From positions 256,768 through 320,767 of the IMG/VR virus record IMGVR_UViG_3300046092_000062: DNA of 64,000 nucleotides; one strand, written 5' to 3'. Shown here piece by piece: positions 3,578 to 20,557 of the stretch. The position numbers and the translations under genes were made by a program. Within the stretch, counting starts at the first letter, position 1. Every line of letters starts with the position of its first letter. The notes below the pieces were generated by a model. It saw nothing but the letters and a program-made list of their open reading frames with translations. It had not been told where the DNA came from and ran no database searches.

Positions 3578-3580
3578 CCC

Positions 3581-4516
3581 ATGACTATGAAACTACACGA
3601 TGTTGTAGAGCTACAGCAAGCTCTTGTGGACTTAGTGCCTACCAAAGGCATCGAACACGAGATTGATGCTATAGTGGGCAATATTGATCTAATCAAGGGA
3701 AAGTACACAGAAGACTATGCCTACAGATTAGATCAATTGCAAACTAGCCTACGAGAAATTAAGGCTAGTTTGCATAAGCCGTTGGCTCTAGTAGACGACA
3801 TTAAAGATATTGTTGGACAAGACCTAACTGATGCTACTGCTAAGTTTGATGCAGTTGATTATCAAGATGAATTGCGTTATGCCAATGCAGAACGTATACG
3901 TCAAGTACGTCAACTGTATGTGCCAAATGGTGCAGACGAAATTGTTACTAGGGCTATTGACTTATATGTTGATTGGCGCTATCCTGGATTGGAAATTGGT
4001 TGCCGTGACGGTCATTGGACCAAGTATCTAGTAAGTTGCGATCCATTGTACATTACAGATGTGTTCCAGGAATTTTTGGATAGCACCTCTAGTAACTACC
4101 CTGAAGAGTACCAACAACGGTTGCGCCCATACTTGATCGAAAATCAAAATCTATCCATGCTACCACAGAATCAATTTGGTTTTGTGTTTAGCTGGAACTT
4201 CTTTAACTACCTGACGTTAGCTAACATTAAACATTACCTAACACAAGTACTCACTCTGCTTCGGCCAGGTGGAACATTTATGTTCAGTTACAACAATGCA
4301 GATTTAGCAGCGGGTGCAGCGTATGCTGACAGCTACTTTATGAGCTATGCACCTAAGCATCTTCTAATTCCCATTTGCGAAGAACTTGGGTATGAAGTAA
4401 TTGGTACAACTGATATTGAACCGGCAGTAAGTTGGTTAGAGATCAGAAAACCTGGCACACTTAAAATGATTAAAGCTCATCAAGTTTTAGGTGAAATAAA
4501 ATACGTTAACCCTTGA
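3581..4516 (+). CDS. class I SAM-dependent methyltransferase with N-terminal helical region
   Basis: GLEIGCRDG motif I; FGFVFSWNFFNY; LLRPGGTFMF. Confidence 0.75.
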   Translation: MTMKLHDVVELQQALVDLVPTKGIEHEIDAIVGNIDLIKGKYTEDYAYRLDQLQTSLREIKASLHKPLALVDDIKDIVGQDLTDATAKFDAVDYQDELRYANAERIRQVRQLYVPNGADEIVTRAIDLYVDWRYPGLEIGCRDGHWTKYLVSCDPLYITDVFQEFLDSTSSNYPEEYQQRLRPYLIENQNLSMLPQNQFGFVFSWNFFNYLTLANIKHYLTQVLTLLRPGGTFMFSYNNADLAAGAAYADSYFMSYAPKHLLIPICEELGYEVIGTTDIEPAVSWLEIRKPGTLKMIKAHQVLGEIKYVNP

Positions 4517-4541
4517 TATTTTCTAAATATATCTATATACT
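4513..4541 (+). promoter_or_regulatory. sigma70-type promoter with embedded TAAATA late-type box
   Basis: TTGATA(4513-4518)-17 bp-TATACT(4536-4541); TAAATA at 4524-4529. Confidence 0.55.
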
Positions 4542-4562
4542 ACACATTACATTGGAGAACAC

Positions 4563-5297
4563 ATGCAAGACAATCTAAAAGACATCGTACAGCACACATT
4601 TGGACTAGGTTCAATTGAGTTGGTTAAAGTGACCGGCACTGCAAGCGAAACAGTCCTAAACACAATCGCCGAAGACCGTTCGGTTATTGTTGAGGCTAAA
4701 TTTAAAAACCCAGTACCAGAATTTGTTGGTACGTTTGGTATGCCTAACTTGGGCAAACTAAAAACAATCCTTAACATCGAAGTATATCGCGACGATGCTA
4801 AGTTGAGCATTAACACACAGCAAAACTCTGCAGGCGAAACTGTTCCAGCTGGTATCCACTTTGAAAACAAAGATGGCGACTTTAAGAACGACTATCGCTT
4901 CATGAGTGCAGAAGTTGTTAACGACAAACTCAAAGCAGTCAAGTTCAAAGGCGTTCGTTGGGGTGTTGACGTAGTTCCTACTATTGCTAGCATCCAGCGT
5001 ATGCGCTTCATGGCTAGTGCTAACAGTGAAGAAACTACGTTTACTGCTAAAACAGAAAACGGAGCACTCAAGTTCTTCTTTGGTGACTCGTCAAGTCACG
5101 CAGGTAACTTTGTTTTTGATAACAACGTTAGTGGCACATTGACTAAGAGTTGGTCTTGGCCAGTAGACGCAGTTATCAGCATCCTTGGATTGCCAGGTGA
5201 CAAGACCTTCAAGATCAGCGACGAAGGTGCTGCAATGATTACCGTTGATAGCGGCATTGCTGATTACAGCTACATTATTCCTGCTCAACAAAAGTAA
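4563..5297 (+). CDS. sliding clamp / polymerase processivity factor (gp45-like)
   Basis: 244 aa, two-lobed beta/alpha pattern (FGMPNLGKLKTIL; final strands ISDEGAAMITVDSGIADYSYIIPA); next to polB. Confidence 0.65.
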   Translation: MQDNLKDIVQHTFGLGSIELVKVTGTASETVLNTIAEDRSVIVEAKFKNPVPEFVGTFGMPNLGKLKTILNIEVYRDDAKLSINTQQNSAGETVPAGIHFENKDGDFKNDYRFMSAEVVNDKLKAVKFKGVRWGVDVVPTIASIQRMRFMASANSEETTFTAKTENGALKFFFGDSSSHAGNFVFDNNVSGTLTKSWSWPVDAVISILGLPGDKTFKISDEGAAMITVDSGIADYSYIIPAQQK

Positions 5298-5923
5298 TGT
5301 CTTTAGGTCATCTGATACCTAGAGGATACCGTCCCGGTAGTGGGTTAATATCCCCTACTGGGATTTTCTATCTAAGTATCCCCAAGAATGCCAGCACATA
5401 TATGACCAACTTACTGGTTGCCAATGATTGGCGCCACAATGACGTATACAGTCCCGATATTAAGGAATGTATAGTTGTTCTACGTGATCCAGTTGATCGT
5501 TGGCTTAGCGGCTTTGCAACGTATGCAGCCAGCTGGTTGCTCGGGGAAGGATACGGCAGTGATCACTTTAGGGAAGACTACAATGATCTCACACAGCGAA
5601 TCATCTTTGATCAAATTGTATTTGACGACCACACCACCGAACAAGTAAAATACGTTGAGCAACTAGGTGACCGTAAGATTACATTCTTTAAACTCAATTA
5701 CGAGTTAGGAATGAACTTAGAAAGTTTTTTAGATTGCAAGCTAGGTCTAAATAACCCTATAGCAGATAACGCAGGCGAAGACAATTACGATACTAAAATG
5801 ATTGCCAAGCACATGAGATTCAGAGTAGAACAAGATCCAGTTCTACGTGCTAAGATCATTGCGCGATATGCTGCTGACTACGAACTAATTAAAACAGCAA
5901 ACTATTACAATGAGCCAAGATAA
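5297..5923 (+). CDS. sulfotransferase family protein
   Basis: 5'-PSB-like YLSIPKNAST and 3'-PB-like VLRDPVDRWLSG. Confidence 0.75.
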   Translation: MSLGHLIPRGYRPGSGLISPTGIFYLSIPKNASTYMTNLLVANDWRHNDVYSPDIKECIVVLRDPVDRWLSGFATYAASWLLGEGYGSDHFREDYNDLTQRIIFDQIVFDDHTTEQVKYVEQLGDRKITFFKLNYELGMNLESFLDCKLGLNNPIADNAGEDNYDTKMIAKHMRFRVEQDPVLRAKIIARYAADYELIKTANYYNEPR

Positions 5924-7604
5924 TTTAACAAGCAAACAAAAAGATTACGCAGTATTCTTGCCAGCTATCAGTGGCTTCTACGGTACGTTTGTGGGCAAAC
6001 AGCGTGTTAACAATGACTATGTCGACCCAGCACGTTTCCCGCAAGGACTAACCGACATGGAGCAGATGAACTGGCTTAACGATCAAAAGGGCTTGTTCCC
6101 GTATAAGTGGAGTCTATATTCAGGTGGACATGCTAACTTGGATCTCACTAAAGAAGATGCAAGCGAAGACATGGTTCGCAAACGTGACCCAAACACTATC
6201 CTGCTAGGTGACTCGGGAGGATTCCAGATTGCCAAGGGCTTGTGGGAAGGCGAGTGGCGTGATCTTAATAGCCAAGAAGTTAAAGACAAAATGGCCGCAA
6301 TGGTAGCACTAGGTGTAGAAGTTAAGCCGGTGCTAGACAAAGCTGGTAACCCTGTTATTGGCAAGAAAGGTCCGAAGACTATCACAATCGACCATGCTAA
6401 AAACTATCAAAACTTAATTGATGCAGCACAAAAGAAACGTGGTGCTGTTCTAACGTGGTTAGATAGTATCAGCAATTACGGCATGGGATTGGATATTCCA
6501 ACTTGGGTTATCCATGACAAGAAAGCCAGCGATGCGTGTGGTATTAAAACTCTTGACGAAGCTGTTGCAGCTACAAAGTATAACAACGAATACTTCATGG
6601 CGCAACGCAAAGGCAAGAACAATGGCGGCGCTAAGTTCCTAAACGTGTTGCAAGGTGACAATCACAACAGTGCCGAAGATTGGTACCAAGTAATGAAAGA
6701 GTACTGTGATCCTGTTAAGTATCCTGATACACACTTTGATGGCTGGGCAATGGGAGGTCAAAACATGTGTGACGTACACTTGATTTTGAAACGTCTAGTA
6801 GCACTACGTTATGACAACTTACTACAAGAGGGCAAGCATGATTGGATGCACTTCTTGGGCACAAGTAAACTAGAGTGGGCTGTGTTGCTTACTGTTATCC
6901 AGCGAGCTGTGAGAAAATATGTCAATCCTTCTTTTACTATCTCTTTTGATTGCGCTAGCCCTTTTCTTGCAACAGCTAACGGCCAGGTATACTTCGAAAA
7001 CGTATTTCCGCACAACGGAAAGTGGAGCTACAGAATGGCTCCAAGTGCAGACGACAAAAAGTACGCCACTGACACACGCAAATGGTCAGACGGAGTGGTA
7101 CAAGACGGCATTTACCCACGCTGGGAAGACAGTCCCCTTAGTGACATGTTTAAAATGAAAGATATTTGCATCTACAAGCCAGGCGATCTTAATAAGATTG
7201 GCAAAGAAGGTGCAACATCATGGGACAGCTTTAGCTACGCATTGCTTATGGGACATAACGTATGGATGCACCTTACTGCGGTACAAGAAGCTAATAGACG
7301 TTTTGATGCAGGCGAACATCCTGCTATGATGCGATCAGAAAAGCCACTTGCACCTTACTTTGAAGATATTGTCGAAGCTATTTTTGCAGCACCCGATCGT
7401 GAAACAGCAGAAGAGATTATTGAAATGTACGGCGGCCCCAATGGTTACTGGACTGAGATTATTGGCACTCGTGGATTTAAAGGCAAGAAGGCAGTAAGCG
7501 CTCGCCCAATGTTTGATAAACTATTTGACGTAGAAGATCCTGTCAATGACGACGACACTGAATTCAACGAAGCAGCACTAGACAACTTAGAGGATACACA
7601 ATGA
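5910..7604 (+). CDS. dpdA: tRNA-guanine transglycosylase-like DNA 7-deazaguanine insertion enzyme (DpdA family)
   Basis: TGT catalytic motif DSGGFQ; LDIP; NVLQG; MHFLG; SFDCAS; clustered with folE/queD/queE in a phage. Confidence 0.8.
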   Translation: MSQDNLTSKQKDYAVFLPAISGFYGTFVGKQRVNNDYVDPARFPQGLTDMEQMNWLNDQKGLFPYKWSLYSGGHANLDLTKEDASEDMVRKRDPNTILLGDSGGFQIAKGLWEGEWRDLNSQEVKDKMAAMVALGVEVKPVLDKAGNPVIGKKGPKTITIDHAKNYQNLIDAAQKKRGAVLTWLDSISNYGMGLDIPTWVIHDKKASDACGIKTLDEAVAATKYNNEYFMAQRKGKNNGGAKFLNVLQGDNHNSAEDWYQVMKEYCDPVKYPDTHFDGWAMGGQNMCDVHLILKRLVALRYDNLLQEGKHDWMHFLGTSKLEWAVLLTVIQRAVRKYVNPSFTISFDCASPFLATANGQVYFENVFPHNGKWSYRMAPSADDKKYATDTRKWSDGVVQDGIYPRWEDSPLSDMFKMKDICIYKPGDLNKIGKEGATSWDSFSYALLMGHNVWMHLTAVQEANRRFDAGEHPAMMRSEKPLAPYFEDIVEAIFAAPDRETAEEIIEMYGGPNGYWTEIIGTRGFKGKKAVSARPMFDKLFDVEDPVNDDDTEFNEAALDNLEDTQ

Positions 7605-8104: not shown

Positions 8105-8286
8105 ACAATCTCAGTAAAGAGCAGTTACGTCTTGTGATTGCAGAAATGCGCCCAGACATCTCAGACAGCGACTTTGAAGCTATGTGGGAAGAAATGCAAA
8201 CTGCATGTACTACTCACTACTCAGAAGTAGCAAACGAAGTCATTGACTTACATACCACAACCGACTCACAAGGAATTATTAGATGA
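8101..8286 (+). CDS. hypothetical protein
   Basis: ATGA overlaps at both ends. Confidence 0.55.
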   Translation: MNNLSKEQLRLVIAEMRPDISDSDFEAMWEEMQTACTTHYSEVANEVIDLHTTTDSQGIIR

Positions 8287-8732
8287 GCCAACGAGACCAA
8301 GCACTAGCAGATAAGCGTGAGCGTATCATGCAACGTGCAGACCGACAAATTTGGGTAACCTTCAAGAAAGAAGGCATTCACAAATACCCAGCAGCAGCAA
8401 CAGACCCAGCACTAGCAACAGGCGACGAATATGATGTTTCGTTCCTTGGCTTGCCACATCGTCATATCTTTCACTTCCGTGTATGGATTGACGTGTTTCA
8501 CAATGACCGCGACATCGAGTTTATCCAATTTAAACGTTGGCTTGAAAACTTGTATGCCGGCGGTACGCTAGAGCTCAACTTTAAGAGTTGCGAAATGATT
8601 GCAGATGATTTGTACACACAAATCAACACAAAGTATCCTGACCGCAGTGTCTGGATTGAAGTTGCCGAAGATGGTGAGAACGGCGCTTTAATTAAATATG
8701 AATCTCACCGCCCACAACTGATTAGTATCTAA
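8283..8732 (+). CDS. dpdL: QueD-paralog T-fold protein (DpdL-like, proposed CDG decarboxylase)
   Basis: LGLPHRHIF matches LxxxHRHxF; SCEMIA resembles the QueD T/S-xE-x-I/L-A motif; separate canonical queD present. Confidence 0.65.
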   Translation: MSQRDQALADKRERIMQRADRQIWVTFKKEGIHKYPAAATDPALATGDEYDVSFLGLPHRHIFHFRVWIDVFHNDRDIEFIQFKRWLENLYAGGTLELNFKSCEMIADDLYTQINTKYPDRSVWIEVAEDGENGALIKYESHRPQLISI

Positions 8733-11632: not shown

Positions 11633-12616
11633 ATGTCAAAGACCGTTATTGTCACTGGCGGATGTGGGTACATTGGTAGTCACGTTGCACGGGCTTTCAA
11701 ACAAGAAGGCTACGCCGTACACATTGTTGACACTGTTTACCGTGAACACACTGTCAAGGACATTGACGGTCATTTGATCAATTGCTTTGCTAGCAAAGCT
11801 GCACTCAGCATGTACATCATGCTGCAACCAGACATTATTGTGCATTGTGCAGGCACTAGTCTAGTTGGTCCAAGCATAACTAATCCAGCAGAGTATTACG
11901 ATAACAACGTTAGTAAGACTATTAAGATGCTGGATGTCTTAAAGGATTTACCAAAGCGTCCCACTATTATGTTTAGTAGTAGCGCCAGCGTGTATGGCGT
12001 CCCTAAAGAATCACCGATAACAATAAACAGCCCCTTACAGCCAATTAGCCCATACGGTTCAACTAAGATGATTGTTGAGCAAGTGCTAAAGGATTACGGC
12101 AGTGCATATGGATTCAACACCATTTGCTTTAGATATTTTAATGCTGCCGGCGCAGCGGCAACTGGTGACTTAGGGCAAGAACCTGATGCAACACATCTAG
12201 TTGCACGTACAGTTGAAGCAAGCCTAAGCGGCAGATTAGTTACTATCAATGGTGACGACTTTGACACACTAGATGGTACCTGCGTTCGTGACTACGTACA
12301 CGTTTGGGATATTGCCGTGGCACACACTAAGGCAGCGGAATTCTTTGCTATCCATTATGGCCCAGACACCATTGCTGGACATCATGTGTTTAACTTAGGC
12401 ACTGGTAGCGGGTACAGTAACAAGGAAATTGTTGACTACGTTTACGAAACATACGGATTGACTACAGTCAAGTATGGCCCACGTAGACCCGGCGACCCAG
12501 ACTTATTAGTAGCAGATCCATCGGTAGCTAACTCAGTATTGGGATGGTATCCAATTAACAGCAGTATAAAAAACATCATTGATACAGCATATAACTGGTA
12601 CAAGAATCGTGTTTGA
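11633..12616 (+). CDS. galE: UDP-glucose 4-epimerase
   Basis: TGGCGYIGSH, FSSSASVYG, YGSTK, RYFNAAG, DGTCVRDYVHV, RRPGDP. Confidence 0.9.
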   Translation: MSKTVIVTGGCGYIGSHVARAFKQEGYAVHIVDTVYREHTVKDIDGHLINCFASKAALSMYIMLQPDIIVHCAGTSLVGPSITNPAEYYDNNVSKTIKMLDVLKDLPKRPTIMFSSSASVYGVPKESPITINSPLQPISPYGSTKMIVEQVLKDYGSAYGFNTICFRYFNAAGAAATGDLGQEPDATHLVARTVEASLSGRLVTINGDDFDTLDGTCVRDYVHVWDIAVAHTKAAEFFAIHYGPDTIAGHHVFNLGTGSGYSNKEIVDYVYETYGLTTVKYGPRRPGDPDLLVADPSVANSVLGWYPINSSIKNIIDTAYNWYKNRV

Positions 12617-13214
12617 TAAAATTAAGAAATTTGAACTTGCGCTAGCAGAATTTACTGGCGCACCATATGCAATCATGACCGATTGCTGCACACATGCAAT
12701 TGAACTGTGCCTACGATATGATAAGATCACTGAGTGCTCATTCACTCCTTACACGTATTTGAGCATCCCAATGACAATGCACAAGCTAGGCATCAACTAT
12801 AGCTACTTTCCAGACACGTTACCACATCGTCAACAATGGGTTGGTGAATACAAGTTTGAAGCTACTCGAATTTGGGACAGTGCAAGACGACTAGAAGAAA
12901 ACATGTACCGTCCGGGAATGATGCAATGTTTAAGTTTTGGACATACAAAGCCTTTACACATTGGCCGCGGTGGTGCTATACTACTAGACGACAAGTCAGC
13001 ATATGATGCGTTAATTTTAATGCGCTATGATGGACGCGACCTAAATATTAAACCATGGGAATCTCAGAAAGAATTCAGAGTTGGGTATCACTATAAACCC
13101 ACGCCAGAAGAAGCAGTACAAGGACTTGCACTACTACAGGGCGTTAAGGTTAATAAACCCAAACCAGTAACAGTTGAGTACCCAGACCTAAGAACAATCA
13201 CTATCAAGGACTAA
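12609..13214 (+). CDS. short DegT/DnrJ/EryC1/StrS-type PLP-dependent enzyme
   Basis: FELALAEFTG, DCCTHAIELCL, IWDSAR, SFGHTKPLHIGRGG (PLP Lys); only ~201 aa; GTG start chosen. Confidence 0.75.
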   Translation: MFDKIKKFELALAEFTGAPYAIMTDCCTHAIELCLRYDKITECSFTPYTYLSIPMTMHKLGINYSYFPDTLPHRQQWVGEYKFEATRIWDSARRLEENMYRPGMMQCLSFGHTKPLHIGRGGAILLDDKSAYDALILMRYDGRDLNIKPWESQKEFRVGYHYKPTPEEAVQGLALLQGVKVNKPKPVTVEYPDLRTITIKD

Positions 13215-13215
13215 A

Positions 13216-13917
13216 ATGACAGATACAAGTAAAAACTTATCACAAGTTATTCGCGACAAGATGCGAGCAGACAACAAACGCTTCTGGGCGGGCGACAACA
13301 TCAGTGAGTATGTTGGCGAAGAAGAAAAAGAATCGTTAATTAGCGAAGCAGCAGAAGCATTTGAAAAAGTACTTGACACACTATTGATTGACCGCGAAAA
13401 TGATCCGAACTCAAAAGGCACAGCAAGGCGTCTTGCAAAAATGTACTACAACGAAATTATGGCTGGGCGGTACGATGCAAGCCCTAGCGCAACTGCGTTT
13501 CCCAATGATAGCGATGGCGCATACGACGGAATGTTGGTTGTGCGCAGTGAGCTTAAAAGCATGTGTAGCCACCATCACCAACCTGTTACGGGTGTGGCTT
13601 ACATTGGCATTATTGCTGGACAGAAACTCATCGGACTATCGAAGTATACCAGGATTGCACAGTGGTGCGCAAGACGAGGAACACTACAAGAAGAGCTCTG
13701 TATGGACATCGCTCGTGAGATTGAACTTGCAACTGGATCACAAGACGTTGCAGTTTATATTCAGGCTACCCACGGATGTTGTGAGAATCGTGGTATCATG
13801 GCTCACTCTAGTCTTACTCAGACCACAGTACTACGCGGAGCCTTTAAAGAAGACGCAAGCGTAAAGAAAGAGTTCTTTGACAACATCAAATTGCAACAAG
13901 AGTTTGCACCACGCTAA
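13216..13917 (+). CDS. folE: GTP cyclohydrolase I
   Basis: SMCSHH, IGLSKYTR, LQEEL, HGCCENRG. Confidence 0.95.
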   Translation: MTDTSKNLSQVIRDKMRADNKRFWAGDNISEYVGEEEKESLISEAAEAFEKVLDTLLIDRENDPNSKGTARRLAKMYYNEIMAGRYDASPSATAFPNDSDGAYDGMLVVRSELKSMCSHHHQPVTGVAYIGIIAGQKLIGLSKYTRIAQWCARRGTLQEELCMDIAREIELATGSQDVAVYIQATHGCCENRGIMAHSSLTQTTVLRGAFKEDASVKKEFFDNIKLQQEFAPR

Positions 13918-13926
13918 GGAAACAAC

Positions 13927-14142
13927 ATGAACGCCGCAGACATGACAACAGCACTAATCAATCGTGCAAAGGTATTAAACGAGTTTATGGTCACTACTGA
14001 AGTGCCCAACGACTTTAGATTCAACGGGATGGTGCCATTTGATATGCAAATTAAAGATGGTATTATTTACGCACATGTTTGGGGCGTTGACTTTGACGAA
14101 GCGTGTATGCGTTTAGATCAATTTTTAGACACCTGCAAATAA
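13927..14142 (+). CDS. hypothetical protein
   Basis: SD AAGGA; in operon. Confidence 0.65.
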   Translation: MNAADMTTALINRAKVLNEFMVTTEVPNDFRFNGMVPFDMQIKDGIIYAHVWGVDFDEACMRLDQFLDTCK

Positions 14143-14150
14143 AGGCAGCT

Positions 14151-14609
14151 ATGAAGCAGTGGATTCTCAACTGGCTTGAAGCACACGGTCGCAAACGTAT
14201 TGTTATGGACCGTGTAAACAATGAACCTTATCTAGAACGTTACTATGTATTCCTTAAAGACCGTGAGAATTTTCCCTTTAACATTTTTCTGCACAAGTTT
14301 CTTAAGTCAGATCCCGATGACGTGCATGATCATCCTTGGAATTACCGAACTCTTATCTTAAAGGGCGGGTACTGGGAATGGCAACCCCAGTTTAACAGCA
14401 AAGGTCACAAAGTTGGTGAGATTGCAACATGGCGCGGTGCCGGATCATTCCGTAGTGCAAAAGCCAACAGCTATCATCGCATCGAGCTTGATCCCAATGT
14501 GGAATGTTGGACATTGTTTATGCCAGGACGCAAGCGACGCGAATGGGGTTTCCTTAGTAAAGGCACATGGGTACAATGGCAAAAATATCTAGCAACCAGA
14601 TCACAATAA
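14151..14609 (+). CDS. cupin-like protein (HDHPW motif)
   Basis: FLHKFLKSDPDDVHDHPW...ILKGGYWE...YHRI metal-binding cupin pattern. Confidence 0.65.
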   Translation: MKQWILNWLEAHGRKRIVMDRVNNEPYLERYYVFLKDRENFPFNIFLHKFLKSDPDDVHDHPWNYRTLILKGGYWEWQPQFNSKGHKVGEIATWRGAGSFRSAKANSYHRIELDPNVECWTLFMPGRKRREWGFLSKGTWVQWQKYLATRSQ

Positions 14610-14914
14610 TGAACGGATCCTATCCTGTAGACTTGTTTGAGCTTACCAAAGAAGCAGCCGAGTATCTACGTGCTCGTGGAGCAGTTATTCCAAGTAGAAC
14701 AACGTCGTGGGGCACTGTATCCTATCTAGTGCAGTTTCCAGGGTGCAAGCCTAGTTATACCAACCGCGCCGGCGGCAATACAGGTACTAGAGTATTCTTT
14801 CCAGACGAAGACACTATCCTAATGTTTAGCATAGTATACGGGCACCTAATACAGAATTGTAGAGTCAAGTCTATCATGGACATGATTATCAACGAACGGA
14901 TACTTAAACAATGA
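14609..14914 (+). CDS. hypothetical protein (dispersed small phage family)
   Basis: TAATG junction; RVFFPDEDTILMFSI motif. Confidence 0.6.
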   Translation: MNGSYPVDLFELTKEAAEYLRARGAVIPSRTTSWGTVSYLVQFPGCKPSYTNRAGGNTGTRVFFPDEDTILMFSIVYGHLIQNCRVKSIMDMIINERILKQ

Positions 14915-15249
14915 TTGCACTACCACCAGGATGCACTGTAACCTATGCAGTATGGATTGACGTTAAGGAAATGACCACTGAACTTATCGAGTGGTGCGAA
15001 CTAGTTGGTGGCCGTAAGAAAGTCGACAGCTACTACAATCATCGTGGCAACAAAGTCGATACAGAGTACATTGCATTTGGAAAAGCCAAGTGGTGTCACT
15101 ATCATCAAAATGGCAATGGTGGTGTACGCCTACACTTTCACGGCGACGATGCTTCAACTGCGAGCATGTTCTTGCTCAAGTTTATGGACAACGTAACCGC
15201 ACACAATTTAAAAGAAGTACAAGATAGAGTAGAACATGGATTTGTTTAA
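14911..15249 (+). CDS. hypothetical protein (dispersed small phage family)
   Basis: ATGA overlap; RLHFHGDDASTASMFLLKF motif. Confidence 0.65.
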   Translation: MIALPPGCTVTYAVWIDVKEMTTELIEWCELVGGRKKVDSYYNHRGNKVDTEYIAFGKAKWCHYHQNGNGGVRLHFHGDDASTASMFLLKFMDNVTAHNLKEVQDRVEHGFV

Positions 15250-16057
15250 AGGACCAGTGCCGCGACTGTTTGGGCACAAAGATAGTTTAAAAGATAACAA
15301 GTTTTTTGCATCCAACAAGTTTGTTATTAACCAACAGTTTGAAGCATTTACTAACATCTGTCCGCATCGCGGATTTCCTATTTTGCAGCCATCTGGTGTA
15401 GCAGACAACATGCGCTGCGAGCTACACGGATGGCAATGGAACGATGACGGGACACCTGCTAATAACTCAGCGTGTTTAAAGCCACGTAGGCTCACAGTAG
15501 GCAAAAGCGGGCTGATGTTTATGGACTGGCAAGAACCCTCTGATGCTAAATGGGTTAACGATTTGGCTAATGATTCGTTTACGTATAGTCATAGCACACG
15601 CCGAACTGGCACCGGTGATTGGAAGTGGCAAATGGAAATGCACGTGGATCTGCTGCACGTTGACAAGATTCATCCTTTGCTAACCAGTTACGTAGATATA
15701 AACAAACTTCAAACTGAATACGGTAGTGATTGGGTGTGCCAGCACCACGAACACGGATGGTGGTTATTTGTGTATCCATTTACTCATATTGAATGGGAAC
15801 CAGGATGCTTGTACTTTAGTGAAATGGTGCAGACAAACTACGGGTACGAGGTATACATCCATTACTTGTTTAACGAGTCTACTCCGCAGCATGTGCGTGA
15901 AAACTTTATCAAAGTAGCAGAAGTTACATTCGACGAAGACGTGGACGCAGTTAATCGACTATCTCTAAACAATAAATACAGAACACCATCAAAAACTCTT
16001 GACCCACTGGAAGTAGATATTAAGCACTTCTATGATTGGTATAAGGCAAACACATAA
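15236..16057 (+). CDS. Rieske non-heme iron oxygenase alpha-subunit-like protein
   Basis: Rieske CPHRG...CELHGWQW; mononuclear Fe motif EMHVDLLHVDKIH; distal ED. Confidence 0.85.
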   Translation: MDLFKGPVPRLFGHKDSLKDNKFFASNKFVINQQFEAFTNICPHRGFPILQPSGVADNMRCELHGWQWNDDGTPANNSACLKPRRLTVGKSGLMFMDWQEPSDAKWVNDLANDSFTYSHSTRRTGTGDWKWQMEMHVDLLHVDKIHPLLTSYVDINKLQTEYGSDWVCQHHEHGWWLFVYPFTHIEWEPGCLYFSEMVQTNYGYEVYIHYLFNESTPQHVRENFIKVAEVTFDEDVDAVNRLSLNNKYRTPSKTLDPLEVDIKHFYDWYKANT

Positions 16058-16950
16058 TGTACTGTAGAAACAATTGGCTCACTTATTCGTTTGGCGGAAA
16101 CCCTCGCCGTATTCGCGATGAGGATCTTACTGTACAATTTACTGAGCAAGCAGATAAGATAATTCCTCTAGACGAAGTAGCGCAAGCGACTGCAAAAGAA
16201 ATACACTCATTATACCCAGACATTTATGTTGCAATGAGCGGAGGGTGCGATAGCGAGTATGTAGCAAAGAGTTTTAAGGCCGCCGGAGTTCCATTTAAAG
16301 CCATTACAATGACTTGTAAAGGATACCTTGTAATCGGCGAATGGTATACTAAAAAATGGTGCGACGAAAATGATGTTGAACTAATCAAATTCGAAGTTGA
16401 TCCGTTTGAATTATTAGAATACGGTAAACGCACTGTGGGAAGAATCAAGGGCATTAGCTGGTTTGGCTCCACTGTTAATTTAGTAGCAAACGAAGTAGAA
16501 CGACGAGGGGGTTACTTAGTAACCGGAGCATTGCCATCGTACTACCCTGATCCAAAATTAAGATTAGACAAAGCAGATCCTGAATTTGTTAAAACATTTC
16601 GTGGATTCATGTTTGACGAAAGTGACTTCTACATAGAATTAGTAAACCCAAATAAGCATCCTTGGGCGTTCTTTTACTGGTCGCCCGAAATGTTGGCTAG
16701 TGTGATATACCATTGGGACACTTCTCAGCCAGTAGAGGACAACAAATGGCGCATGTTTAATGTGCTGCCTAGACCAAAACTAACTGGTTGCGAATTCTTC
16801 ACGCACAATCATATAGCCAAGACTCTTCCCGAGTACAACAATTATTTCAAATGGACGTATGCTCACCGCTCACTAAAATGGGGCGCGAGAGATTTTGCAC
16901 CTTGCCCTGACAGAGAAGAATTCTTAAAAATATTATGTCGGCCCCAATAA
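16057..16950 (+). CDS. PP-loop (adenine nucleotide alpha-hydrolase-like) protein 1
   Basis: VAMSGGCDSEYVA; C-terminal HPWAFFYWSPEML. Confidence 0.7.
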   Translation: MYCRNNWLTYSFGGNPRRIRDEDLTVQFTEQADKIIPLDEVAQATAKEIHSLYPDIYVAMSGGCDSEYVAKSFKAAGVPFKAITMTCKGYLVIGEWYTKKWCDENDVELIKFEVDPFELLEYGKRTVGRIKGISWFGSTVNLVANEVERRGGYLVTGALPSYYPDPKLRLDKADPEFVKTFRGFMFDESDFYIELVNPNKHPWAFFYWSPEMLASVIYHWDTSQPVEDNKWRMFNVLPRPKLTGCEFFTHNHIAKTLPEYNNYFKWTYAHRSLKWGARDFAPCPDREEFLKILCRPQ

Positions 16951-17789
16951 CAATTAGTGCCGGTCATAAGAACTGGTACTCAGTTACTCTAACGCCATTG
17001 CAGCATCCAGAGACTTCTACAGTCAGTATGAGCTTTGGTCACACAGAAGTCGATGGTACGCTAACTTTCCAAGCTGCGGCCGATTATACTGCAAAGTTAA
17101 TTGCGGCTCAATGCTCTAATCTCTATCTAGCAATGAGCGGAGGGCTTGACAGTGAGTTTGTAGCCGAAGTACTTTATCGCAATGGTATTCAATTTACTCC
17201 AATTGTTGCGATAACGCCCGACAACGTAGAAACTCATTGTGCATTGCACTGGTGCAAATTGCATAACTTAGATCCAGTGATACTTACATTTGTTGAAAAC
17301 GATCCTCGACTGATTAGACAGTTTAGATTAATAGCAAAAGAATTAAAACAAGCAACAGGCTTATCTAATATAGTGGCTTACTTAGCAGAGTACGTTAAAG
17401 AACTAGGTGGACAATTATTAGTAGGTGATAGCCCGTTTGGCGGCCCTACTAGCAGTTATTACCAAGCGTCTGGTGAAATATTTGAAATTGATTGGCACTC
17501 ATTTATTACAGAATTTATGCAACCTAATTCACATCCCGGTGCCTTCTTCCAGTACACCCCAGAGTTGTTTTTGGCTATGGCAAAAGAGCTTAATATCACT
17601 ATTAGTGAATCTGCAGGCAAGGCTGAGTTGTATGAAATTCCGTTTAAGCCCAAGGACCCAAACCCGGCTCTTCCTATATCACTAGCAGTTAGTAAACAGT
17701 TAGCAGAATTTGCAGGTGTAGGTATGTATTGTTTCTTCCCGCCGCTTAAATGGCACAAAGACCAATTGATTAAGTTATTGTCAAAATGA
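16935..17789 (+). CDS. PP-loop protein 2
   Basis: LAMSGGLDSEFVA; HPGAFFQYTPELF. Confidence 0.7.
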   Translation: MSAPITISAGHKNWYSVTLTPLQHPETSTVSMSFGHTEVDGTLTFQAAADYTAKLIAAQCSNLYLAMSGGLDSEFVAEVLYRNGIQFTPIVAITPDNVETHCALHWCKLHNLDPVILTFVENDPRLIRQFRLIAKELKQATGLSNIVAYLAEYVKELGGQLLVGDSPFGGPTSSYYQASGEIFEIDWHSFITEFMQPNSHPGAFFQYTPELFLAMAKELNITISESAGKAELYEIPFKPKDPNPALPISLAVSKQLAEFAGVGMYCFFPPLKWHKDQLIKLLSK

Positions 17790-18634
17790 AAATTGGACAC
17801 AACGGCTGGGCGTCTATTAACTTAGAAAGAGATAACCTAGTAAACATAACAGCACCCTTTGAATTCACTACTACCGCTGTGCCTGTAGCAATGACATTCA
17901 CCAAAGCTGCTGATTACACTGCACAGTTAATTGCAACCAAGTACACTAACCTGCACTTGTGCCTAAGTGGTGGACTTGATAGTGAGTTTGTGGCTAAAGT
18001 GTTGGTTAGAAACAGCATACCATTTACCCCAGTAATAGTGGCTGCTGACTATGTGGATGCAGAAAATTGGTACGCTTACAAATTCTGCCAAGACAATAAG
18101 TTAACTCCGCTGGTATTAGATTTTGCTGGAAAAGAAAAGCATATCGAGTTAGTTAAGATGCTCATTGCACATGCACACAAACATTGCTTACCATTTGATA
18201 GATCATTGATTGTAAACGTTGTTGCTACCCTACTACCAGAAGCGCATATAATAACGGGATACGGAGATCCTGTACATGTTTCGTCTACGTTTTACGAGCC
18301 AATTGGCCCATTGGTAGAATTAACAGACCACGATTACTTTCTGGACGTAGAATACGGAACTAAACACCCCGGTGCATTTTTTTCGTATACTCCCGAGTTA
18401 TTTGCTTCTTTGATTAAGGAGCTTGATATAACCAAAAATAGTCAAATGGCAAAAGCCGAACTGTATGGTATTCTGTGTAGATCAAAAATACAATCATCCT
18501 TTTTTAACTTTTACCATTTACCCGAACTTGAATTTATTATCAAAAAGAGTTTAGACAAATTAGGTAAAAACCCACTACACCAAGCGTTCTTTATAAATAG
18601 AGATACACTACTCAATCAGTTAAGCGGCCTTTAG
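17786..18634 (+). CDS. PP-loop protein 3
   Basis: LCLSGGLDSEFVA; HPGAFFSYTPELF. Confidence 0.7.
   Translation: MKIGHNGWASINLERDNLVNITAPFEFTTTAVPVAMTFTKAADYTAQLIATKYTNLHLCLSGGLDSEFVAKVLVRNSIPFTPVIVAADYVDAENWYAYKFCQDNKLTPLVLDFAGKEKHIELVKMLIAHAHKHCLPFDRSLIVNVVATLLPEAHIITGYGDPVHVSSTFYEPIGPLVELTDHDYFLDVEYGTKHPGAFFSYTPELFASLIKELDITKNSQMAKAELYGILCRSKIQSSFFNFYHLPELEFIIKKSLDKLGKNPLHQAFFINRDTLLNQLSGL
18592..18599 (+). promoter_or_regulatory. T4-type late promoter
   Basis: exact TATAAATA ~95 nt upstream of queD. Confidence 0.5.
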
Positions 18635-18688
18635 AGCATCATCCCGCTATACAAATTCTGCTGCCTATGCTACAATTAACATAGGAGA
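18623..18688 (+). promoter_or_regulatory. candidate structured cis-regulatory RNA leader of queD
   Basis: AGCGG/CCGCT stem 18623-18648; CCTATG(18664-18669)/CATAGG(18680-18685) stem occludes SD AGGAG. Confidence 0.45.
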
Positions 18689-18695
18689 ATAAAGC

Positions 18696-19193
18696 ATGAC
18701 ACCCGTTCAATACAAATACACCAGTACCAAAGAGTACCACAACGCCTTTCCTGTTGCTTACAGACAATGGCGAGCAGACAGCCACTGCAATCTAATTCAC
18801 GGCTATGCGTTTAGCATGAAGTTCTATTTTGGAACCAATGACCTAGACGTTCGTAACTGGGCTGCTGACTACGGCGGCCTCAAGGAACTGAAGAAAACAC
18901 TAGAAGATCAATTTGACCATACATTGATTGTGGCACAGGATGATCCAGAAATGGAAACATTCAAATTGCTACAAGAAAAGAACATGGCCAAGATTGTAGT
19001 GTTGCCAGCACTAGGTTGCGAAGCACTAAGCGATATGCTTTACAAGTATGTCAATGGCGTTTACATTCCTGAGATGTGGGGACCAGGTGAAGCGGCACGT
19101 TTATGGTGCTATCGCGTTGAAGTACGTGAAACACAGAGCAACATGGCGTACCGCGAAGGTCACCGTGAATGGAATGAGGACTTGTTTGCATGA
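18696..19193 (+). CDS. queD: 6-carboxy-5,6,7,8-tetrahydropterin synthase
   Basis: HCNLIHGY, DYGGLK, FDHT, GCEAL, VEVRET. Confidence 0.88.
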   Translation: MTPVQYKYTSTKEYHNAFPVAYRQWRADSHCNLIHGYAFSMKFYFGTNDLDVRNWAADYGGLKELKKTLEDQFDHTLIVAQDDPEMETFKLLQEKNMAKIVVLPALGCEALSDMLYKYVNGVYIPEMWGPGEAARLWCYRVEVRETQSNMAYREGHREWNEDLFA

Positions 19194-19486
19194 GCAAGCA
19201 GGAACAAGAAATCATGGATATTCTGCAAGAAGAATGTGCAGAAGTAATCCAAGCAGTTAGCAAAGCCCGTCGATTTGGCCTAGATAACTCTCACAAGTCT
19301 GGTAAGACACAGCGTCAGAATCTAGAAACAGAAATAGGCGATGTGCTTTGCATGATTGAACTGCTAAATGAGCGTGGAGTAATTGACGCCTCTAGCGTAC
19401 AAGCTGCTATCCTTGCCAAGCGAGAAAAGCTACACCACTGGTCAAATATTTTTAAGGATGACTCATGCACCCCAACATCGAAGTAA
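19190..19486 (+). CDS. MazG-like NTP pyrophosphohydrolase
   Basis: LQEECAEVIQAVSK...LETEIGDVL (ExxE..ExxD). Confidence 0.8.
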   Translation: MSKQEQEIMDILQEECAEVIQAVSKARRFGLDNSHKSGKTQRQNLETEIGDVLCMIELLNERGVIDASSVQAAILAKREKLHHWSNIFKDDSCTPTSK

Positions 19487-19684: not shown

Positions 19685-20557
19685 ATGTTTGGAACAAATG
19701 AAATTATTGGTAAGAAGTATTTTAAGGATGCTCCGGCAGACAGCTTGTTTGTAACTAGCATGTTCTTTACACTACAAGGCGAAGGTCCTTATGCAGGTAT
19801 GCCCGCATTGTTTATTCGATTGGCTAAGTGTAATCTAGTGTGCAGCTTCTGTGATACATTCTTTGACGACGGTGATTGGATGACGTACGATCAAATCGAA
19901 GGCAAAATGTATGCAGCTATCAACGACTATTGGAACAACCAAGGCAAAGCAACGCCAACATGGGCAAACAATGGGTTAAATAACTATCCCGGTATTGTGT
20001 TGGTAATGACTGGCGGCGAACCTCTCCTGCAGGAGAACATTAGTGCATTTATGACACGTCAACTTGCACATTTCAAGGCAGTTCAGGTCGAAAGTAACGG
20101 CATTCCTGTTACTGATGTTCCTGCCGGTGTAACGCTAGTGTGTAGCCCTAAATGTGCTGAGAAAGATGGCAAGGCCATCAAGTACTTTGCGCCGTCGGCA
20201 ACTATCCTGCAACGTGCAGACTGTTTGAAGTTTGTTATGAGTGCGGATGCAGATAGTCCGTATAACAGCGTACCGCAGTGGGCACATGACTGGAAGGCAG
20301 CAACAGGCAAAGAGATCTATTGCAGCCCGATGAACGTGTACAACAGTTTCCCACAGAAGATCAAATTGCTTCGTGCAGAAAAAGGCAACATCACAATGGC
20401 TGAACGCAGCACAGTTGATGAAGTTATCAGCTTCTGGGAACCGGGCTTGTTGGACTTGAAAGCTAACCAAGCTAACCATGAGTACGCTGCACACTATTGC
20501 ATCGAACATGGTTTCAAACTCAACCTGCAAATGCACTTATATGCGAGCCTAGCATAA
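19685..20557 (+). CDS. queE: 7-carboxy-7-deazaguanine synthase (radical SAM)
   Basis: TLQGEG, FIRLAKCNLVCSFCDT, TGGEPLLQ, VESNG, CSPK, LNLQMH. Confidence 0.93.
   Translation: MFGTNEIIGKKYFKDAPADSLFVTSMFFTLQGEGPYAGMPALFIRLAKCNLVCSFCDTFFDDGDWMTYDQIEGKMYAAINDYWNNQGKATPTWANNGLNNYPGIVLVMTGGEPLLQENISAFMTRQLAHFKAVQVESNGIPVTDVPAGVTLVCSPKCAEKDGKAIKYFAPSATILQRADCLKFVMSADADSPYNSVPQWAHDWKAATGKEIYCSPMNVYNSFPQKIKLLRAEKGNITMAERSTVDEVISFWEPGLLDLKANQANHEYAAHYCIEHGFKLNLQMHLYASLA

What the first reader, a model, noticed from the sequence alone, without database searches (positions are those of the whole stretch)
16057..18634. Three tandem SGGxDS PP-loop paralogs where queC would be expected
Seen: three ~280-300-aa paralogs (SGG[C/L]DSE[Y/F]VA; HP[W/G]AFFx[W/Y][S/T]PE[M/L]) directly upstream of queD, with no QueC Zn-binding Cys cluster. 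Known: QueC, asparagine synthetase and TilS use this PP-loop to adenylate a substrate before amine attack. Inference: they may be non-orthologous QueC replacements that activate the CDG carboxyl for amide or ester formation. Alternatively they may be an unrelated cassette inserted with the Rieske gene.
Basis: partly seen in the sequence, partly recalled or inferred. Interest (0 to 1): 0.68.

Follow-up and report, generated by a model that had tools for sequence, protein, structure and literature searches.

The report
Accessory phage amide-ligase paralogs beside queD
Three old paralogs of an unnamed, phage-only family of asparagine-synthetase-like ATP enzymes sit inside a jumbo phage's 7-deazaguanine DNA-modification gene cluster; they are optional add-ons rather than QueC substitutes, and may attach amines to the carboxy-deazaguanine intermediate.

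Summary
Three co-directional, overlapping genes (16057-16950, 16935-17789, 17786-18634) encode true paralogs with an SGGxDS PP-loop and an HPxAFFxY(S/T)PE motif. They have no QueC zinc site and lie 61 nt upstream of queD.

They are not QueC-like. A confident model (pLDDT 96.5) matches asparagine synthetase B, beta-lactam synthetase and carbapenam synthetase at Z 13-14 over about 250 residues. QueC reaches only Z 7.3. They are stand-alone synthetase domains without a glutaminase domain.

The window holds a full 7-deazaguanine DNA-modification cluster: a divergent TGT-fold DpdA-like protein, DpdL, FolE, QueD, MazG-like and QueE. The absence of QueC is typical of DpdL-type phages such as phiST.

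The ligase genes are accessory. Two near-complete sibling genomes with the same cluster have neither them nor QueC. Only 2 of 24 independently sampled clusters carry them. The folE-queD slot is hypervariable, and distant family members lie elsewhere, next to oxygenases.

Best reading: ATP-dependent carboxylate-amine ligases. The enzyme class is well supported. CDG or dCDG as substrate is inferred only (about 0.4). An independent ligase-plus-Rieske cassette is a serious rival.

The parts
5910..7604 (+). 564-aa divergent DpdA-like DNA/tRNA-guanine transglycosylase (TGT fold), with a DSGGFQ motif
   Evidence: No Pfam, PHROG or PDB sequence hit. The AF2 model has pLDDT 80.3 and the top 50 Foldseek PDB hits are all TGT. 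The atlas feature search points to a TGT cluster at 0.92. Homologs occur in PA5oct-like phages, Phosso and Vibrio phage 2.275.O.
7601..8104 (+). 167-aa conserved ORF of unknown function between the DpdA-like gene and DpdL
   Evidence: Conserved at this position in 11 loci with full-length matches. No family hit.
8283..8732 (+). DpdL-like T-fold protein (proposed CDG decarboxylase), with an LxxxHRHxF motif
   Evidence: phmmer vs phiST DpdL gives 6e-14. phrog_17812 gives 6e-37. The motif is seen in the alignment and is defined in PMC10516641.
9417..10595 (+). Group-1 glycosyltransferase-like protein; core member of the cluster
   Evidence: Pfam Glycos_transf_1 and Glyco_trans_1_2 match below their cut-offs. 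Present in 32 of 32 sampled clusters.
11633..12616 (+). NAD-dependent sugar epimerase/dehydratase; core member of the cluster
   Evidence: Homologs in L085 and L088 carry PF01370. Present in 32 of 32 clusters.
12579..13214 (+). Short (211 aa) DegT/DnrJ-like protein
   Evidence: PF01041 1e-13. Present in 30 of 32 clusters.
13216..13917 (+). FolE, GTP cyclohydrolase I
   Evidence: Homologs carry PF01227. Present in 31 of 32 clusters.
14103..14609 (+). Cupin / cysteine-dioxygenase-like protein; variable-slot cargo
   Evidence: phrog_4786 2e-41. Found in only 3 of 32 sampled clusters.
14911..15249 (+). 112-aa ORF of unknown function that recurs just upstream of ligase genes
   Evidence: A 112-aa ORF stands directly before the ligase gene in L018, L037 and L085. 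tblastn hits in 9 loci.
15236..16057 (+). Compact Rieske non-haem-iron oxygenase
   Evidence: PF00355 2e-9. The sequence shows CxH-x16-CxxH and ExxxDxxHxxxxH; reading these as the Rieske and mononuclear-iron motifs rests on my own knowledge. Its stop overlaps the PP1 start by 1 nt.
16057..16950 (+). PP1: stand-alone asparagine-synthetase-type PP-loop ligase, subfamily A
   Evidence: dN/dS 0.037 against L001.
16935..17789 (+). PP2: same family, subfamily B
   Evidence: dN/dS 0.067.
17786..18634 (+). PP3: same family, subfamily C; this is the paralog that was modelled
   Evidence: AF2 pLDDT 96.5. AsnB, beta-lactam synthetase and carbapenam synthetase at Z 13-14. dN/dS 0.097.
18696..19193 (+). 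QueD (CPH4 synthase) of the phage type, with a CxxxHGY motif
   Evidence: PF01242 1e-14 and phrog_2389 5e-35. 51% identical to R26L QueD and 34% to phiST QueD.
19190..19486 (+). MazG-like nucleotide pyrophosphohydrolase
   Evidence: PF03819 1e-8. phiST also has a MazG-like gene in its cluster.
19685..20557 (+). QueE, radical-SAM CDG synthase
   Evidence: tblastn matches annotated phage QueE proteins at up to 55% identity, E 5e-99.

Best explanation
PP1, PP2 and PP3 are three anciently diverged paralogs of an unnamed family found so far only in uncultured phages. Each is a stand-alone asparagine-synthetase-type synthetase domain: a PP-loop ATP pyrophosphatase with the helical C-terminal subdomain of AsnB and beta-lactam synthetase, and with neither an Ntn glutaminase domain nor the QueC zinc site. 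Enzymes of this fold bind ATP at SGGxDS, adenylate a carboxylate and let an amine displace AMP to give an amide. The genes lie in the variable slot between folE and queD of a DpdA-like / DpdL / FolE / QueD / MazG / QueE cluster for 7-deazaguanine DNA modification in a jumbo phage. They are optional decorating genes, not a core step. The core cluster without them presumably gives a phiST-like product through DpdL. Most likely the ligases take the one carboxylate this cluster makes, 7-carboxy-7-deazaguanine. They would take it either as free base or after DpdA has placed it in DNA, as CmoY does with 5-carboxymethylcytosine. They would then couple it to ammonia or another amine, giving 7-carboxamide-type deazaguanines. 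The three subfamilies would differ in amine or in sequence context. The translationally coupled Rieske oxygenase would act on the amine or on the product. What is shown: paralogy, purifying selection, the fold class, cluster membership by position, and the accessory status. What is inferred: the amide-ligase chemistry (from the fold family), the CDG/dCDG substrate (from context and chemical logic only), and any division of labour among the three copies.
For: Fold. The model has pLDDT 96.5. VIA-align gives human ASNS Z 13.9, E. coli AsnB 13.2, beta-lactam synthetase 13.1 and carbapenam synthetase 12.9 over 234-254 residues. The next tier is at or below 9.8, and QueC reaches 7.3 over 137 residues. 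The Foldseek top hits are beta-lactam synthetase. In BFVD a stand-alone 'asparagine synthase' has TM 0.64, while QueC proteins stay below 0.3. Nine of 72 family members give weak Pfam Asn_synthase hits against 3 for QueC.

Functional genes. SGGxDS, C101, P195, F198 and K234 are invariant in all 72 aligned members. H194, Y201-E204 and R232 are conserved in at least 90%. dN/dS is 0.04-0.10 for all three paralogs.

Context. The DpdA-like protein has a TGT fold. DpdL is present, as are FolE, QueD and QueE. There is no QueC in G000 or in the 100%-complete relative G002. Of 55 non-redundant full-length family members in IMG/VR loci, 45 lie in loci that carry folE, queD or queE. In every such locus where both folE and queD are seen, the ligase genes lie between them. 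Members of at least four starred subfamilies occupy that same slot, in 1, 2 or 3 copies per phage. The ligase genes and queD share one high-dS mosaic block.

Precedent. CmoY is a 271-aa stand-alone asparagine-synthetase homolog that ligates glycine to 5-carboxymethylcytosine in phage DNA (PMC12783734).
Against: The genes are dispensable for the cluster. G011 (92% complete) and G012 (95% complete) have no family member and no QueC, and only 2 of 24 DpdA-seeded clusters carry one.

The slot also holds cargo with no plausible link to deazaguanine, such as an FG-GAP protein and ClpP. Position is therefore weak evidence.

All slot occurrences come from one broad syntenic phage lineage, so they are not independent replicates.

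More distant members (E 1e-40 to 1e-48) lie outside que clusters with TctC, FA-hydroxylase, NMO, 2OG or Rieske genes.

DpdL, if it is a CDG decarboxylase, would compete for the same substrate.

There is no sequence similarity to CmoY beyond the PP-loop.

No substrate-level evidence of any kind was obtained.
Confidence: 0.42

Rival explanations
1. Independent cassette. The ligase(s) and an oxygenase partner (Rieske here; FA-hydroxylase, 2OG or NMO elsewhere) form a self-contained accessory module. It amidates some other carboxylate, such as a host metabolite, a sugar acid, a lipid or a peptide. It merely sits in a recombination-prone slot of the que cluster.
For: Ligase+Rieske pairs occur away from que genes: L014-16 and L021 next to radical-SAM/B12 and desaturase genes, L047, and L176. 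In G006 and G007 the pair lies about 30 kb from queD. Distant members recur with TctC, FA-hydroxylase, NMO and 2OG oxygenases. The slot is hypervariable and holds FG-GAP and ClpP genes. The family is absent from most siblings. The block has a separate dS history.
Against: The closest 45 of 55 members lie in loci with que genes. Four subfamilies all use the same slot directly before queD. Other slot and flank cargo is nucleotide-related: HIT, MazG, PRTase and HhH-GPD. G006 and G007 still carry queD and the DpdA-like gene. No alternative carboxylate is suggested by any neighbouring gene.
Confidence: 0.33
2. Sugar-acid amidation. The ligases work with the upstream glycosyltransferase, epimerase and DegT-like genes to amidate a uronic-acid-type sugar that ends up on DNA or on the virion. 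O-antigen asparagine-synthetase-like amidotransferases do this kind of reaction.
For: GT, epimerase and DegT-like genes lie 3-6 kb upstream in the same orientation. That asparagine-synthetase-family enzymes amidate uronic acids in polysaccharide pathways is my own knowledge and was not tested here.
Against: The sugar genes are core (30-32 of 32 clusters) while the ligases are accessory. No UDP-sugar dehydrogenase was seen that would make a uronic acid. The ligases are physically tied to the Rieske gene and queD, not to the sugar genes.
Confidence: 0.1
3. True non-orthologous QueC. One or more paralogs convert CDG through ADG to preQ0 (amide, then nitrile), restoring the canonical pathway.
For: The position is next to queD, QueC is absent, and PP-loop chemistry could in principle activate CDG and ADG.
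Against: The fold is the AsnB type, not the QueC type, and there is no zinc site. No known member of the AsnB fold family makes a nitrile (my own knowledge). Siblings need neither QueC nor these genes. DpdL marks a QueC-less route. No QueF, ArcS or Gat-QueC downstream genes were found in the loci.
Confidence: 0.05

Closest known systems
Asparagine synthetase B family synthetase domain (AsnB/ASNS, beta-lactam synthetase, carbapenam synthetase, TsnB9; Pfam PF00733)
   Same: SGGxDS PP-loop. Whole-domain structural match at Z 12.9-13.9 over 234-254 residues, including the C-terminal helical subdomain. The expected chemistry is carboxylate adenylation followed by amide formation.
   Different: No N-terminal Ntn glutaminase domain. 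None of the three reaches the Pfam cut-off. The family has its own HPxAFFxY(S/T)PE motif and an invariant Cys. It was found only in viral or metagenomic sequence.
CmoY of Synechococcus phage S-B43 (ATP-dependent amide ligase on 5-carboxymethylcytosine in DNA; PMC12783734)
   Same: A stand-alone, roughly 270-300-aa asparagine-synthetase-like protein (271 aa, PF00733 4e-15). It is encoded next to the enzymes that create a carboxylated base in a phage. Its homologs form several clusters with differing active-site residues, for which the authors propose different amine substrates. That resembles the subfamily mix seen here.
   Different: Only the PP-loop aligns (hhalign probability 12%). CmoY lacks the roughly 50-residue N-terminal extension. 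The base system is different (C5-carboxymethylcytosine vs 7-deazaguanine). Activity on DNA is proven for CmoY and untested here.
QueC (7-cyano-7-deazaguanine synthase), with the phage QueC* and Gat-QueC variants
   Same: PP-loop ATPase superfamily. Gene position beside queD, queE and folE. CDG as a conceivable substrate.
   Different: No zinc-binding Cys cluster. Z is only 7.3 over 137 residues. TM is below 0.3 to phage QueCs. There is no Pfam hit. The genes are accessory rather than core.
DpdL-type phage 7-deazaguanine systems (Cellulophaga phage phiST, Acidovorax phage ACP17; PMC10516641)
   Same: FolE, QueD, QueE, a MazG-like protein, DpdL with the LxxxHRHxF motif, a TGT-fold transglycosylase, and no QueC.
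   Different: The transglycosylase is a 564-aa form that matches neither DpdA3 nor Pfam TGT or DUF6610 by sequence. Sugar genes are added to the core. phiST and every other cultured phage searched lack the ligase family.

Membership tests
QueC (PF06508) | SGGxDS PP-loop near the N-terminus | tested here: met
   SGGCDS or SGGLDS is present in all three. The feature is shared by the whole PP-loop superfamily, so it does not discriminate.
QueC (PF06508) | C-terminal zinc-binding cysteine cluster | tested here: not met
   No CxxCxxC-type cluster is present in the three sequences. The only invariant Cys is C101.
QueC (PF06508) | Match to the family profile above the gathering score | tested here: not met
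   No QueC hit for PP1-3 at E up to 1. No PF06508 match anywhere in G000.
QueC (PF06508) | QueC is the closest fold | tested here: not met
   3bl5 scores Z 7.3 over 137 residues, against AsnB-family Z 13-14 over about 250.
QueC (PF06508) | Converts CDG to preQ0 | not testable with these tools
   This needs complementation of E. coli delta-queC or an in-vitro assay.
Asparagine synthetase family, synthetase domain (PF00733) | Whole-domain structural match, including the C-terminal helical subdomain | tested here: met
   9b6c Z 13.9, 1ct9 13.2, 1jgt 13.1 and 1q15 12.9, well clear of the next tier. Foldseek top hits agree.
Asparagine synthetase family, synthetase domain (PF00733) | Match to the family profile above the gathering score | tested here: not met
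   No hit for PP1-3 and none in G000. Nine of 72 relatives give hits at E up to 0.1, the best 2.9e-5.
Asparagine synthetase family, synthetase domain (PF00733) | N-terminal class-II (Ntn) glutaminase domain | tested here: not met
   The proteins are 282-297 aa with about 55 residues before the PP-loop. No GATase hit was found.
Asparagine synthetase family, synthetase domain (PF00733) | Catalytic Lys and the SGxGxDE-like AMP-binding loop | tested here: inconclusive
   An invariant K234 and a conserved TGxGxP loop exist. Residue-level superposition on AsnB or beta-lactam synthetase could not be made with these tools.
CmoY-type DNA-base amide ligase | Stand-alone asparagine-synthetase-like domain encoded beside the enzymes that make a carboxylated base | tested here: met
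   The size and fold class fit. QueE, the CDG synthase, lies 1 kb downstream.
CmoY-type DNA-base amide ligase | Sequence homology to SpCmoY | tested here: not met
   hhalign aligns only 25 columns around the PP-loop, probability 12%. tblastn of PP1 and PP3 finds nothing in 50,697 phage records, which include S-B43.
CmoY-type DNA-base amide ligase | ATP-dependent ligation of an amine to a carboxylated base in DNA | not testable with these tools
   This needs biochemistry.
Phage 7-deazaguanine DNA-modification cluster (Dpd type) | DpdA-family (TGT-fold) transglycosylase | tested here: met
   For the 564-aa protein at 5910-7604, the top 50 PDB fold hits are all TGT, and it carries a DSGGFQ motif. 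Sequence profiles fail to detect it.
Phage 7-deazaguanine DNA-modification cluster (Dpd type) | FolE, QueD and QueE present | tested here: met
Phage 7-deazaguanine DNA-modification cluster (Dpd type) | DpdL with the LxxxHRHxF motif | tested here: met
   the motif is defined.
Phage 7-deazaguanine DNA-modification cluster (Dpd type) | A modified guanine actually present in virion DNA | not testable with these tools
   The phage is uncultured. PA5oct, which shares the DpdA-like protein, resists G-containing restriction sites.

The most novel reading that the evidence does not exclude
The ligases turn 7-carboxy-7-deazaguanine, free or already in DNA, into N-substituted 7-carboxamido-deazaguanines. 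That would be a class of DNA hypermodification not yet described. The four or more subfamilies, carried singly or in twos and threes by related jumbo phages together with changing oxygenase or aminotransferase partners, would be a mix-and-match toolkit. It would diversify the guanine decoration under pressure from modification-sensing nucleases. This phage would then carry up to three different decorations.
Probability: 0.25. Interest if true: 0.8.

Novelty: new variant of a known kind. Interest (0 to 1): 0.55.

Why it matters
Eight 7-deazaguanine derivatives are known in phage DNA. All are explained by QueC, QueF, DpdL, DpdM, DpdN or the archaeosine-forming enzymes ArcS2 and Gat-QueC (PMC10516641). 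An asparagine-synthetase-type ligase working on the CDG carboxyl would add an amide branch to that chemistry. It would parallel the CmoY branch recently found for cytosine.

The family has at least 241 clusters (50% identity) at E 1e-30. It has no name, no Pfam model and no cultured representative, so it is invisible to current annotation.

The context work also turned up a 564-aa TGT-fold protein shared with PA5oct-like Pseudomonas jumbo phages. Their DNA is reported to carry a modified G, but the preprint passages read here name no transglycosylase for it. That protein is directly testable in a cultured phage.

If the rival reading is right, the result is still useful. It defines a recurrent phage ligase-plus-oxygenase module of unknown substrate. 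It also warns that position in the folE-queD slot is not proof of function.

Tried and rejected
- Sequence-profile annotation of PP1-3 gave only N-terminal PP-loop hits: Pfam, PHROGs, NCBIfam and a PDB profile search.
- megablast of the region and tblastn of PP1 and PP3 against 50,697 phage records found nothing. The family has no cultured representative in that collection.
- Pfam TGT and DUF6610 searches of the whole genome were negative. BLASTP of the 564-aa protein against R26L DpdA and phiST DpdA3 was also negative, as was phmmer of phiST DpdA3 against all ORFs. Only the fold search revealed the transglycosylase.
- The 316-aa hypothetical next to QueE in Sinorhizobium phage Phosso was checked as a possible distant ligase. 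It has no PP-loop.
- hhalign of the family profile against single CmoY and QueC sequences aligned only the PP-loop. Single-sequence targets make this an insensitive test.
- The promoter and terminator scan of 13-21 kb was not above shuffled expectation.
- pI and net charge do not separate these proteins from CmoY or from the other cluster enzymes, so they say nothing about DNA binding.
- A full-text search for 'DpdL' returned no relevant paper beyond PMC10516641.
- The careful tree search did not finish in time; the quick IQ-TREE result was used.
- One context look-up returned a 984-bp contig and was uninformative.
- Positive selection was considered and rejected: dN/dS is 0.04-0.10.
- Not used, because they would not bear on the question: complex prediction, the read-mapping tools, alternative genetic codes and RNA-family searches.


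Full report
**1. What is there.** The window is the last 64 kb of a 320,767-bp IMG/VR jumbo-phage record with a CheckV completeness estimate of 92%. At exactly the stated coordinates lie three co-directional ORFs: 16057-16950 (PP1, 297 aa), 16935-17789 (PP2, 284 aa) and 17786-18634 (PP3, 282 aa). They are packed like an operon. The upstream Rieske gene's stop shares one base with the PP1 start. PP1 and PP2 overlap by 16 nt, and PP2 and PP3 by 4 nt. queD starts 61 nt after PP3.

They are real paralogs. PP2 vs PP3 is 38% identical (E 8e-43). PP1 vs PP2 and PP1 vs PP3 are each 24% identical (E 1e-18 and 4e-19).

**2. What the proteins are.** Sequence libraries see only the PP-loop: weak MnmA, LarE, WbuX, TtuA and NAD-synthetase hits confined to about 40-70 residues. 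A word-based search with PP3 found 172 relatives. All are unnamed or called 'hypothetical protein', and none carries a Pfam domain.

An alignment of 72 relatives shows these columns as invariant: G62, G63, D65 and S66 of the SGGxDS loop, plus C101, P195, F198 and K234. S61, H194, Y201-T202-P203-E204 and R232 are conserved in at least 90%. With that alignment AlphaFold2 gave a very confident model of PP3 (pLDDT 96.5, pTM 0.93).

An exhaustive structural comparison with 48,161 PDB representatives put four enzymes clearly on top:
- human asparagine synthetase, Z 13.9 over 254 residues;
- E. coli AsnB, Z 13.2;
- beta-lactam synthetase, Z 13.1;
- carbapenam synthetase, Z 12.9.

The next tier is LarE, TsnB9, NAD synthetase, NcsA, Cap9 and TilS at Z 8-10. 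QueC reaches only Z 7.3 over 137 residues. Foldseek agrees, with beta-lactam synthetase first. Among predicted viral structures, the only close matches are uncharacterized proteins of uncultured phages. A 281-aa stand-alone 'asparagine synthase' follows at TM 0.64, and annotated phage QueCs stay below TM 0.3. Nine of the 72 relatives give weak Pfam Asn_synthase hits, against three for QueC.

The proteins are therefore stand-alone asparagine-synthetase-type synthetase domains with no glutaminase domain. From my own knowledge of the family, every characterized member of this fold adenylates a carboxylate and then forms an amide. AsnB makes an amide with ammonia. Beta-lactam synthetase and carbapenam synthetase form one intramolecularly. 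TsnB9 makes a hydroxamate. That is the basis for the class-level assignment 'ATP-dependent carboxylate-amine ligase', which I hold at roughly 0.85.

**3. What surrounds them.** The full picture is larger.

Upstream lies a 564-aa protein (5910-7604) with a DSGGFQ motif. It escapes Pfam TGT, DUF6610, PHROGs and PDB sequence searches. Modelled from 23 homologs (pLDDT 80.3), its top 50 PDB fold hits are all tRNA-guanine transglycosylases. A language-model feature search also points to a TGT cluster.

Next come a conserved 167-aa ORF and a DpdL-like T-fold protein (8283-8732). The latter matches phiST DpdL by phmmer at 6e-14 and phrog_17812 at 6e-37. It has the exact LxxxHRHxF signature that Cui et al. 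give for DpdL.

The rest of the cluster, in order:
- a glycosyltransferase-like gene, an epimerase and a short DegT-like gene;
- FolE;
- a variable stretch: a cupin, two small ORFs, the Rieske gene and the three ligases;
- QueD, a MazG-like pyrophosphohydrolase and QueE.

No QueC exists in this genome or in a 100%-complete close relative, nor in any of the first 78 related loci. This is the gene set that Cui et al. (PMC10516641) describe for phiST and ACP17: FolE, QueD, QueE, DpdL and a DpdA, but no QueC. phiST DNA carries 2'-deoxy-7-deazaguanine. So QueC is not really 'expected' here. Its absence is a known feature of DpdL-type systems. DpdL's decarboxylase activity is itself unproven: Cui et al. 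could not reconstitute it in E. coli.

**4. Are the ligases part of that system?**

*For.* Among loci recovered with the ligases as query, 45 of 55 non-redundant full-length family members lie in loci that also carry folE, queD or queE. In every such locus where both folE and queD are visible, the ligase genes lie between them. The same holds in independent assemblies. Copy number there is 1, 2 or 3.

The tree shows that PP1, PP2 and PP3 belong to three different well-supported clades. Each clade supplies the single copy in other phages, and a fourth clade also uses the slot. The paralogs are therefore old, not a recent triplication, and related phages carry different subfamilies at the same place.

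All three are under strong purifying selection against the nearest relative (dN/dS 0.037, 0.067 and 0.097). Synonymous divergence of the block Rieske-PP1-PP2-PP3-QueD is 0.75-2.2, far above the flanks at 0.14-0.45. This block was exchanged as a unit that includes queD.

Chemically, the QueE product CDG is the obvious carboxylate made by the neighbours. CPH4 is the other, but QueE consumes it. There is now a precedent. CmoY, a 271-aa stand-alone asparagine-synthetase homolog of Synechococcus phage S-B43, ligates glycine to 5-carboxymethylcytosine in DNA. Its homologs fall into clusters with different predicted amine specificities (PF00733 4e-15).

*Against.* When the lineage is sampled through the DpdA-like gene instead, 32 loci have enough downstream sequence. 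All have DpdL, the GT and the epimerase, and 31 have FolE, but only 5 show a ligase. Of 24 such loci where both folE and queD are visible, 2 have ligases in the slot.

Two near-complete sibling genomes (92% and 95%) contain no family member anywhere. They have no QueC above threshold either. The deazaguanine system therefore works without these genes, so they are accessory.

The slot is a hot spot. Its minimal content is a 133-aa HIT protein. Elsewhere it holds FG-GAP repeat proteins, ClpP, an alpha/beta hydrolase, PLP-aminotransferase-like proteins (the usual neighbour of one ligase subfamily) or Rieske proteins (the usual neighbour of the PP1 subfamily).

The profile search of 1.84 billion representatives finds 241 clusters at E 1e-30 and 671 at 1e-10. 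More distant members (E 1e-40 to 1e-48) sit outside que clusters. Their neighbours are repeatedly TctC-like binding proteins, FA-hydroxylase, NMO-like, 2OG-oxygenase, radical-SAM or Rieske genes. In one such phage the ligase+Rieske pair lies about 30 kb from queD, although that genome does carry queD and the DpdA-like gene.

Finally, all slot occurrences come from one broad syntenic lineage. They are not independent evidence of functional linkage.

**5. Verdict on mechanism.**
- *Shown:* three functional, anciently diverged paralogs of an AsnB-fold PP-loop family without a glutaminase domain or zinc site. They are translationally coupled to a Rieske oxygenase. They are embedded in, but dispensable for, a DpdA-like/DpdL-type 7-deazaguanine cluster.
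- *Inferred from the fold family:* ATP-dependent adenylation of a carboxylate and amide formation.
- *Inferred from context only:* the carboxylate is CDG or dCDG, giving carboxamide-type deazaguanines, with subfamilies differing in amine.

I put the full chain at about 0.4. An independent ligase-oxygenase cassette stands at about 0.33, sugar-acid amidation at about 0.1, and a true QueC replacement at about 0.05.

The chemistry class is right. 'QueC replacement' is not right.

**6. Novelty.** The family is unnamed and has no Pfam or PHROG model. It has no member in 50,697 deposited phage genomes, and I found no paper describing it. The enzyme class and the idea of an asparagine-synthetase-like ligase decorating a carboxylated DNA base are known from CmoY. 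I therefore rate it a new variant of a known kind.

**7. Limits.**
- No substrate-level test is possible with these tools.
- Residue-level superposition on AsnB or beta-lactam synthetase could not be made.
- The tree is the quick IQ-TREE result, because the careful search did not finish.
- Viral contigs are fragments, so absences outside the two near-complete siblings are soft.

Noticed in passing
window 5910-7604 (+): A 564-aa TGT-fold protein with a DSGGFQ motif is invisible to Pfam TGT, Pfam DUF6610, PHROGs and PDB sequence searches. It has about 32%-identical homologs in PA5oct-like Pseudomonas jumbo phages, and more distant ones in Sinorhizobium phage Phosso and Vibrio phage 2.275.O. PA5oct DNA is reported to resist enzymes that cut at G-containing sites. 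The passages of that preprint read here name QueE and PTPS genes but no transglycosylase. This may be a further DpdA subfamily.
   Followed up: partly
window 8283-8732 (+): A DpdL-like protein carries the exact LxxxHRHxF signature. It places this uncultured jumbo-phage lineage among the QueC-less phages predicted to carry 7-deazaguanine in their DNA.
   Followed up: yes
window 15236-19193 compared with L001: Synonymous divergence is 0.75-2.2 across Rieske-PP1-PP2-PP3-QueD but 0.14-0.45 in the flanking genes. This is a mosaic block exchanged by recombination.
   Followed up: partly
folE-queD slot in L022, L034, L037, L093, L104, L124 and others: The slot between folE and queD is hypervariable across the lineage. 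It holds a 133-aa HIT protein alone, or additionally FG-GAP proteins, ClpP, PLP-aminotransferase-like proteins, an alpha/beta hydrolase, Rieske proteins or ligases.
   Followed up: partly
L171:7300-9366 (protein P0196); L043, L041; the P0220 context: Distant family members form a recurrent phage module with TctC-like binding proteins, FA-hydroxylase, NMO-like and 2OG oxygenases. P0196 is 688 aa and matches the family profile in two stretches, possibly a tandem fusion of two ligase domains. The substrate is unknown.
   Followed up: no
L047:5702-11489: One viral contig carries five paralogs of the wider family (four divergent, one closer) around a Rieske gene, with no que genes in the flanks. 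The contig is only 11% complete.
   Followed up: no
window 12579-13214 (+): The DegT/DnrJ-like gene encodes only 211 aa, against about 360 for the family profile. It overlaps the end of the epimerase gene, yet it is conserved in 30 of 32 related clusters. It may be a truncated or repurposed fold.
   Followed up: no
window 18696-19193 (+): QueD has CxxxHGY instead of the canonical CxxxHGH. The QueDs of phiST and Dinoroseobacter phage R26L share this, so a phage QueD subtype replaces one presumed zinc-ligand His with Tyr.
   Followed up: partly
window 908-5923 (+): Just upstream of the modification cluster lie a family-B DNA polymerase (my reading of the 889-aa sequence, not tested), a SAM-dependent methyltransferase (3581-4516), a 244-aa ORF and a weak sulfotransferase-like ORF (5297-5923).
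   Followed up: no
L088:8368-9160 and 13211-15369; L176:2821-3234: Relatives carry further nucleotide or DNA enzymes next to the ligase and que genes: an HhH-GPD glycosylase-like protein, HIT, a phosphoribosyltransferase, an NAD-synthase/QueC-faint PP-loop protein and SAM synthetase.
   Followed up: no
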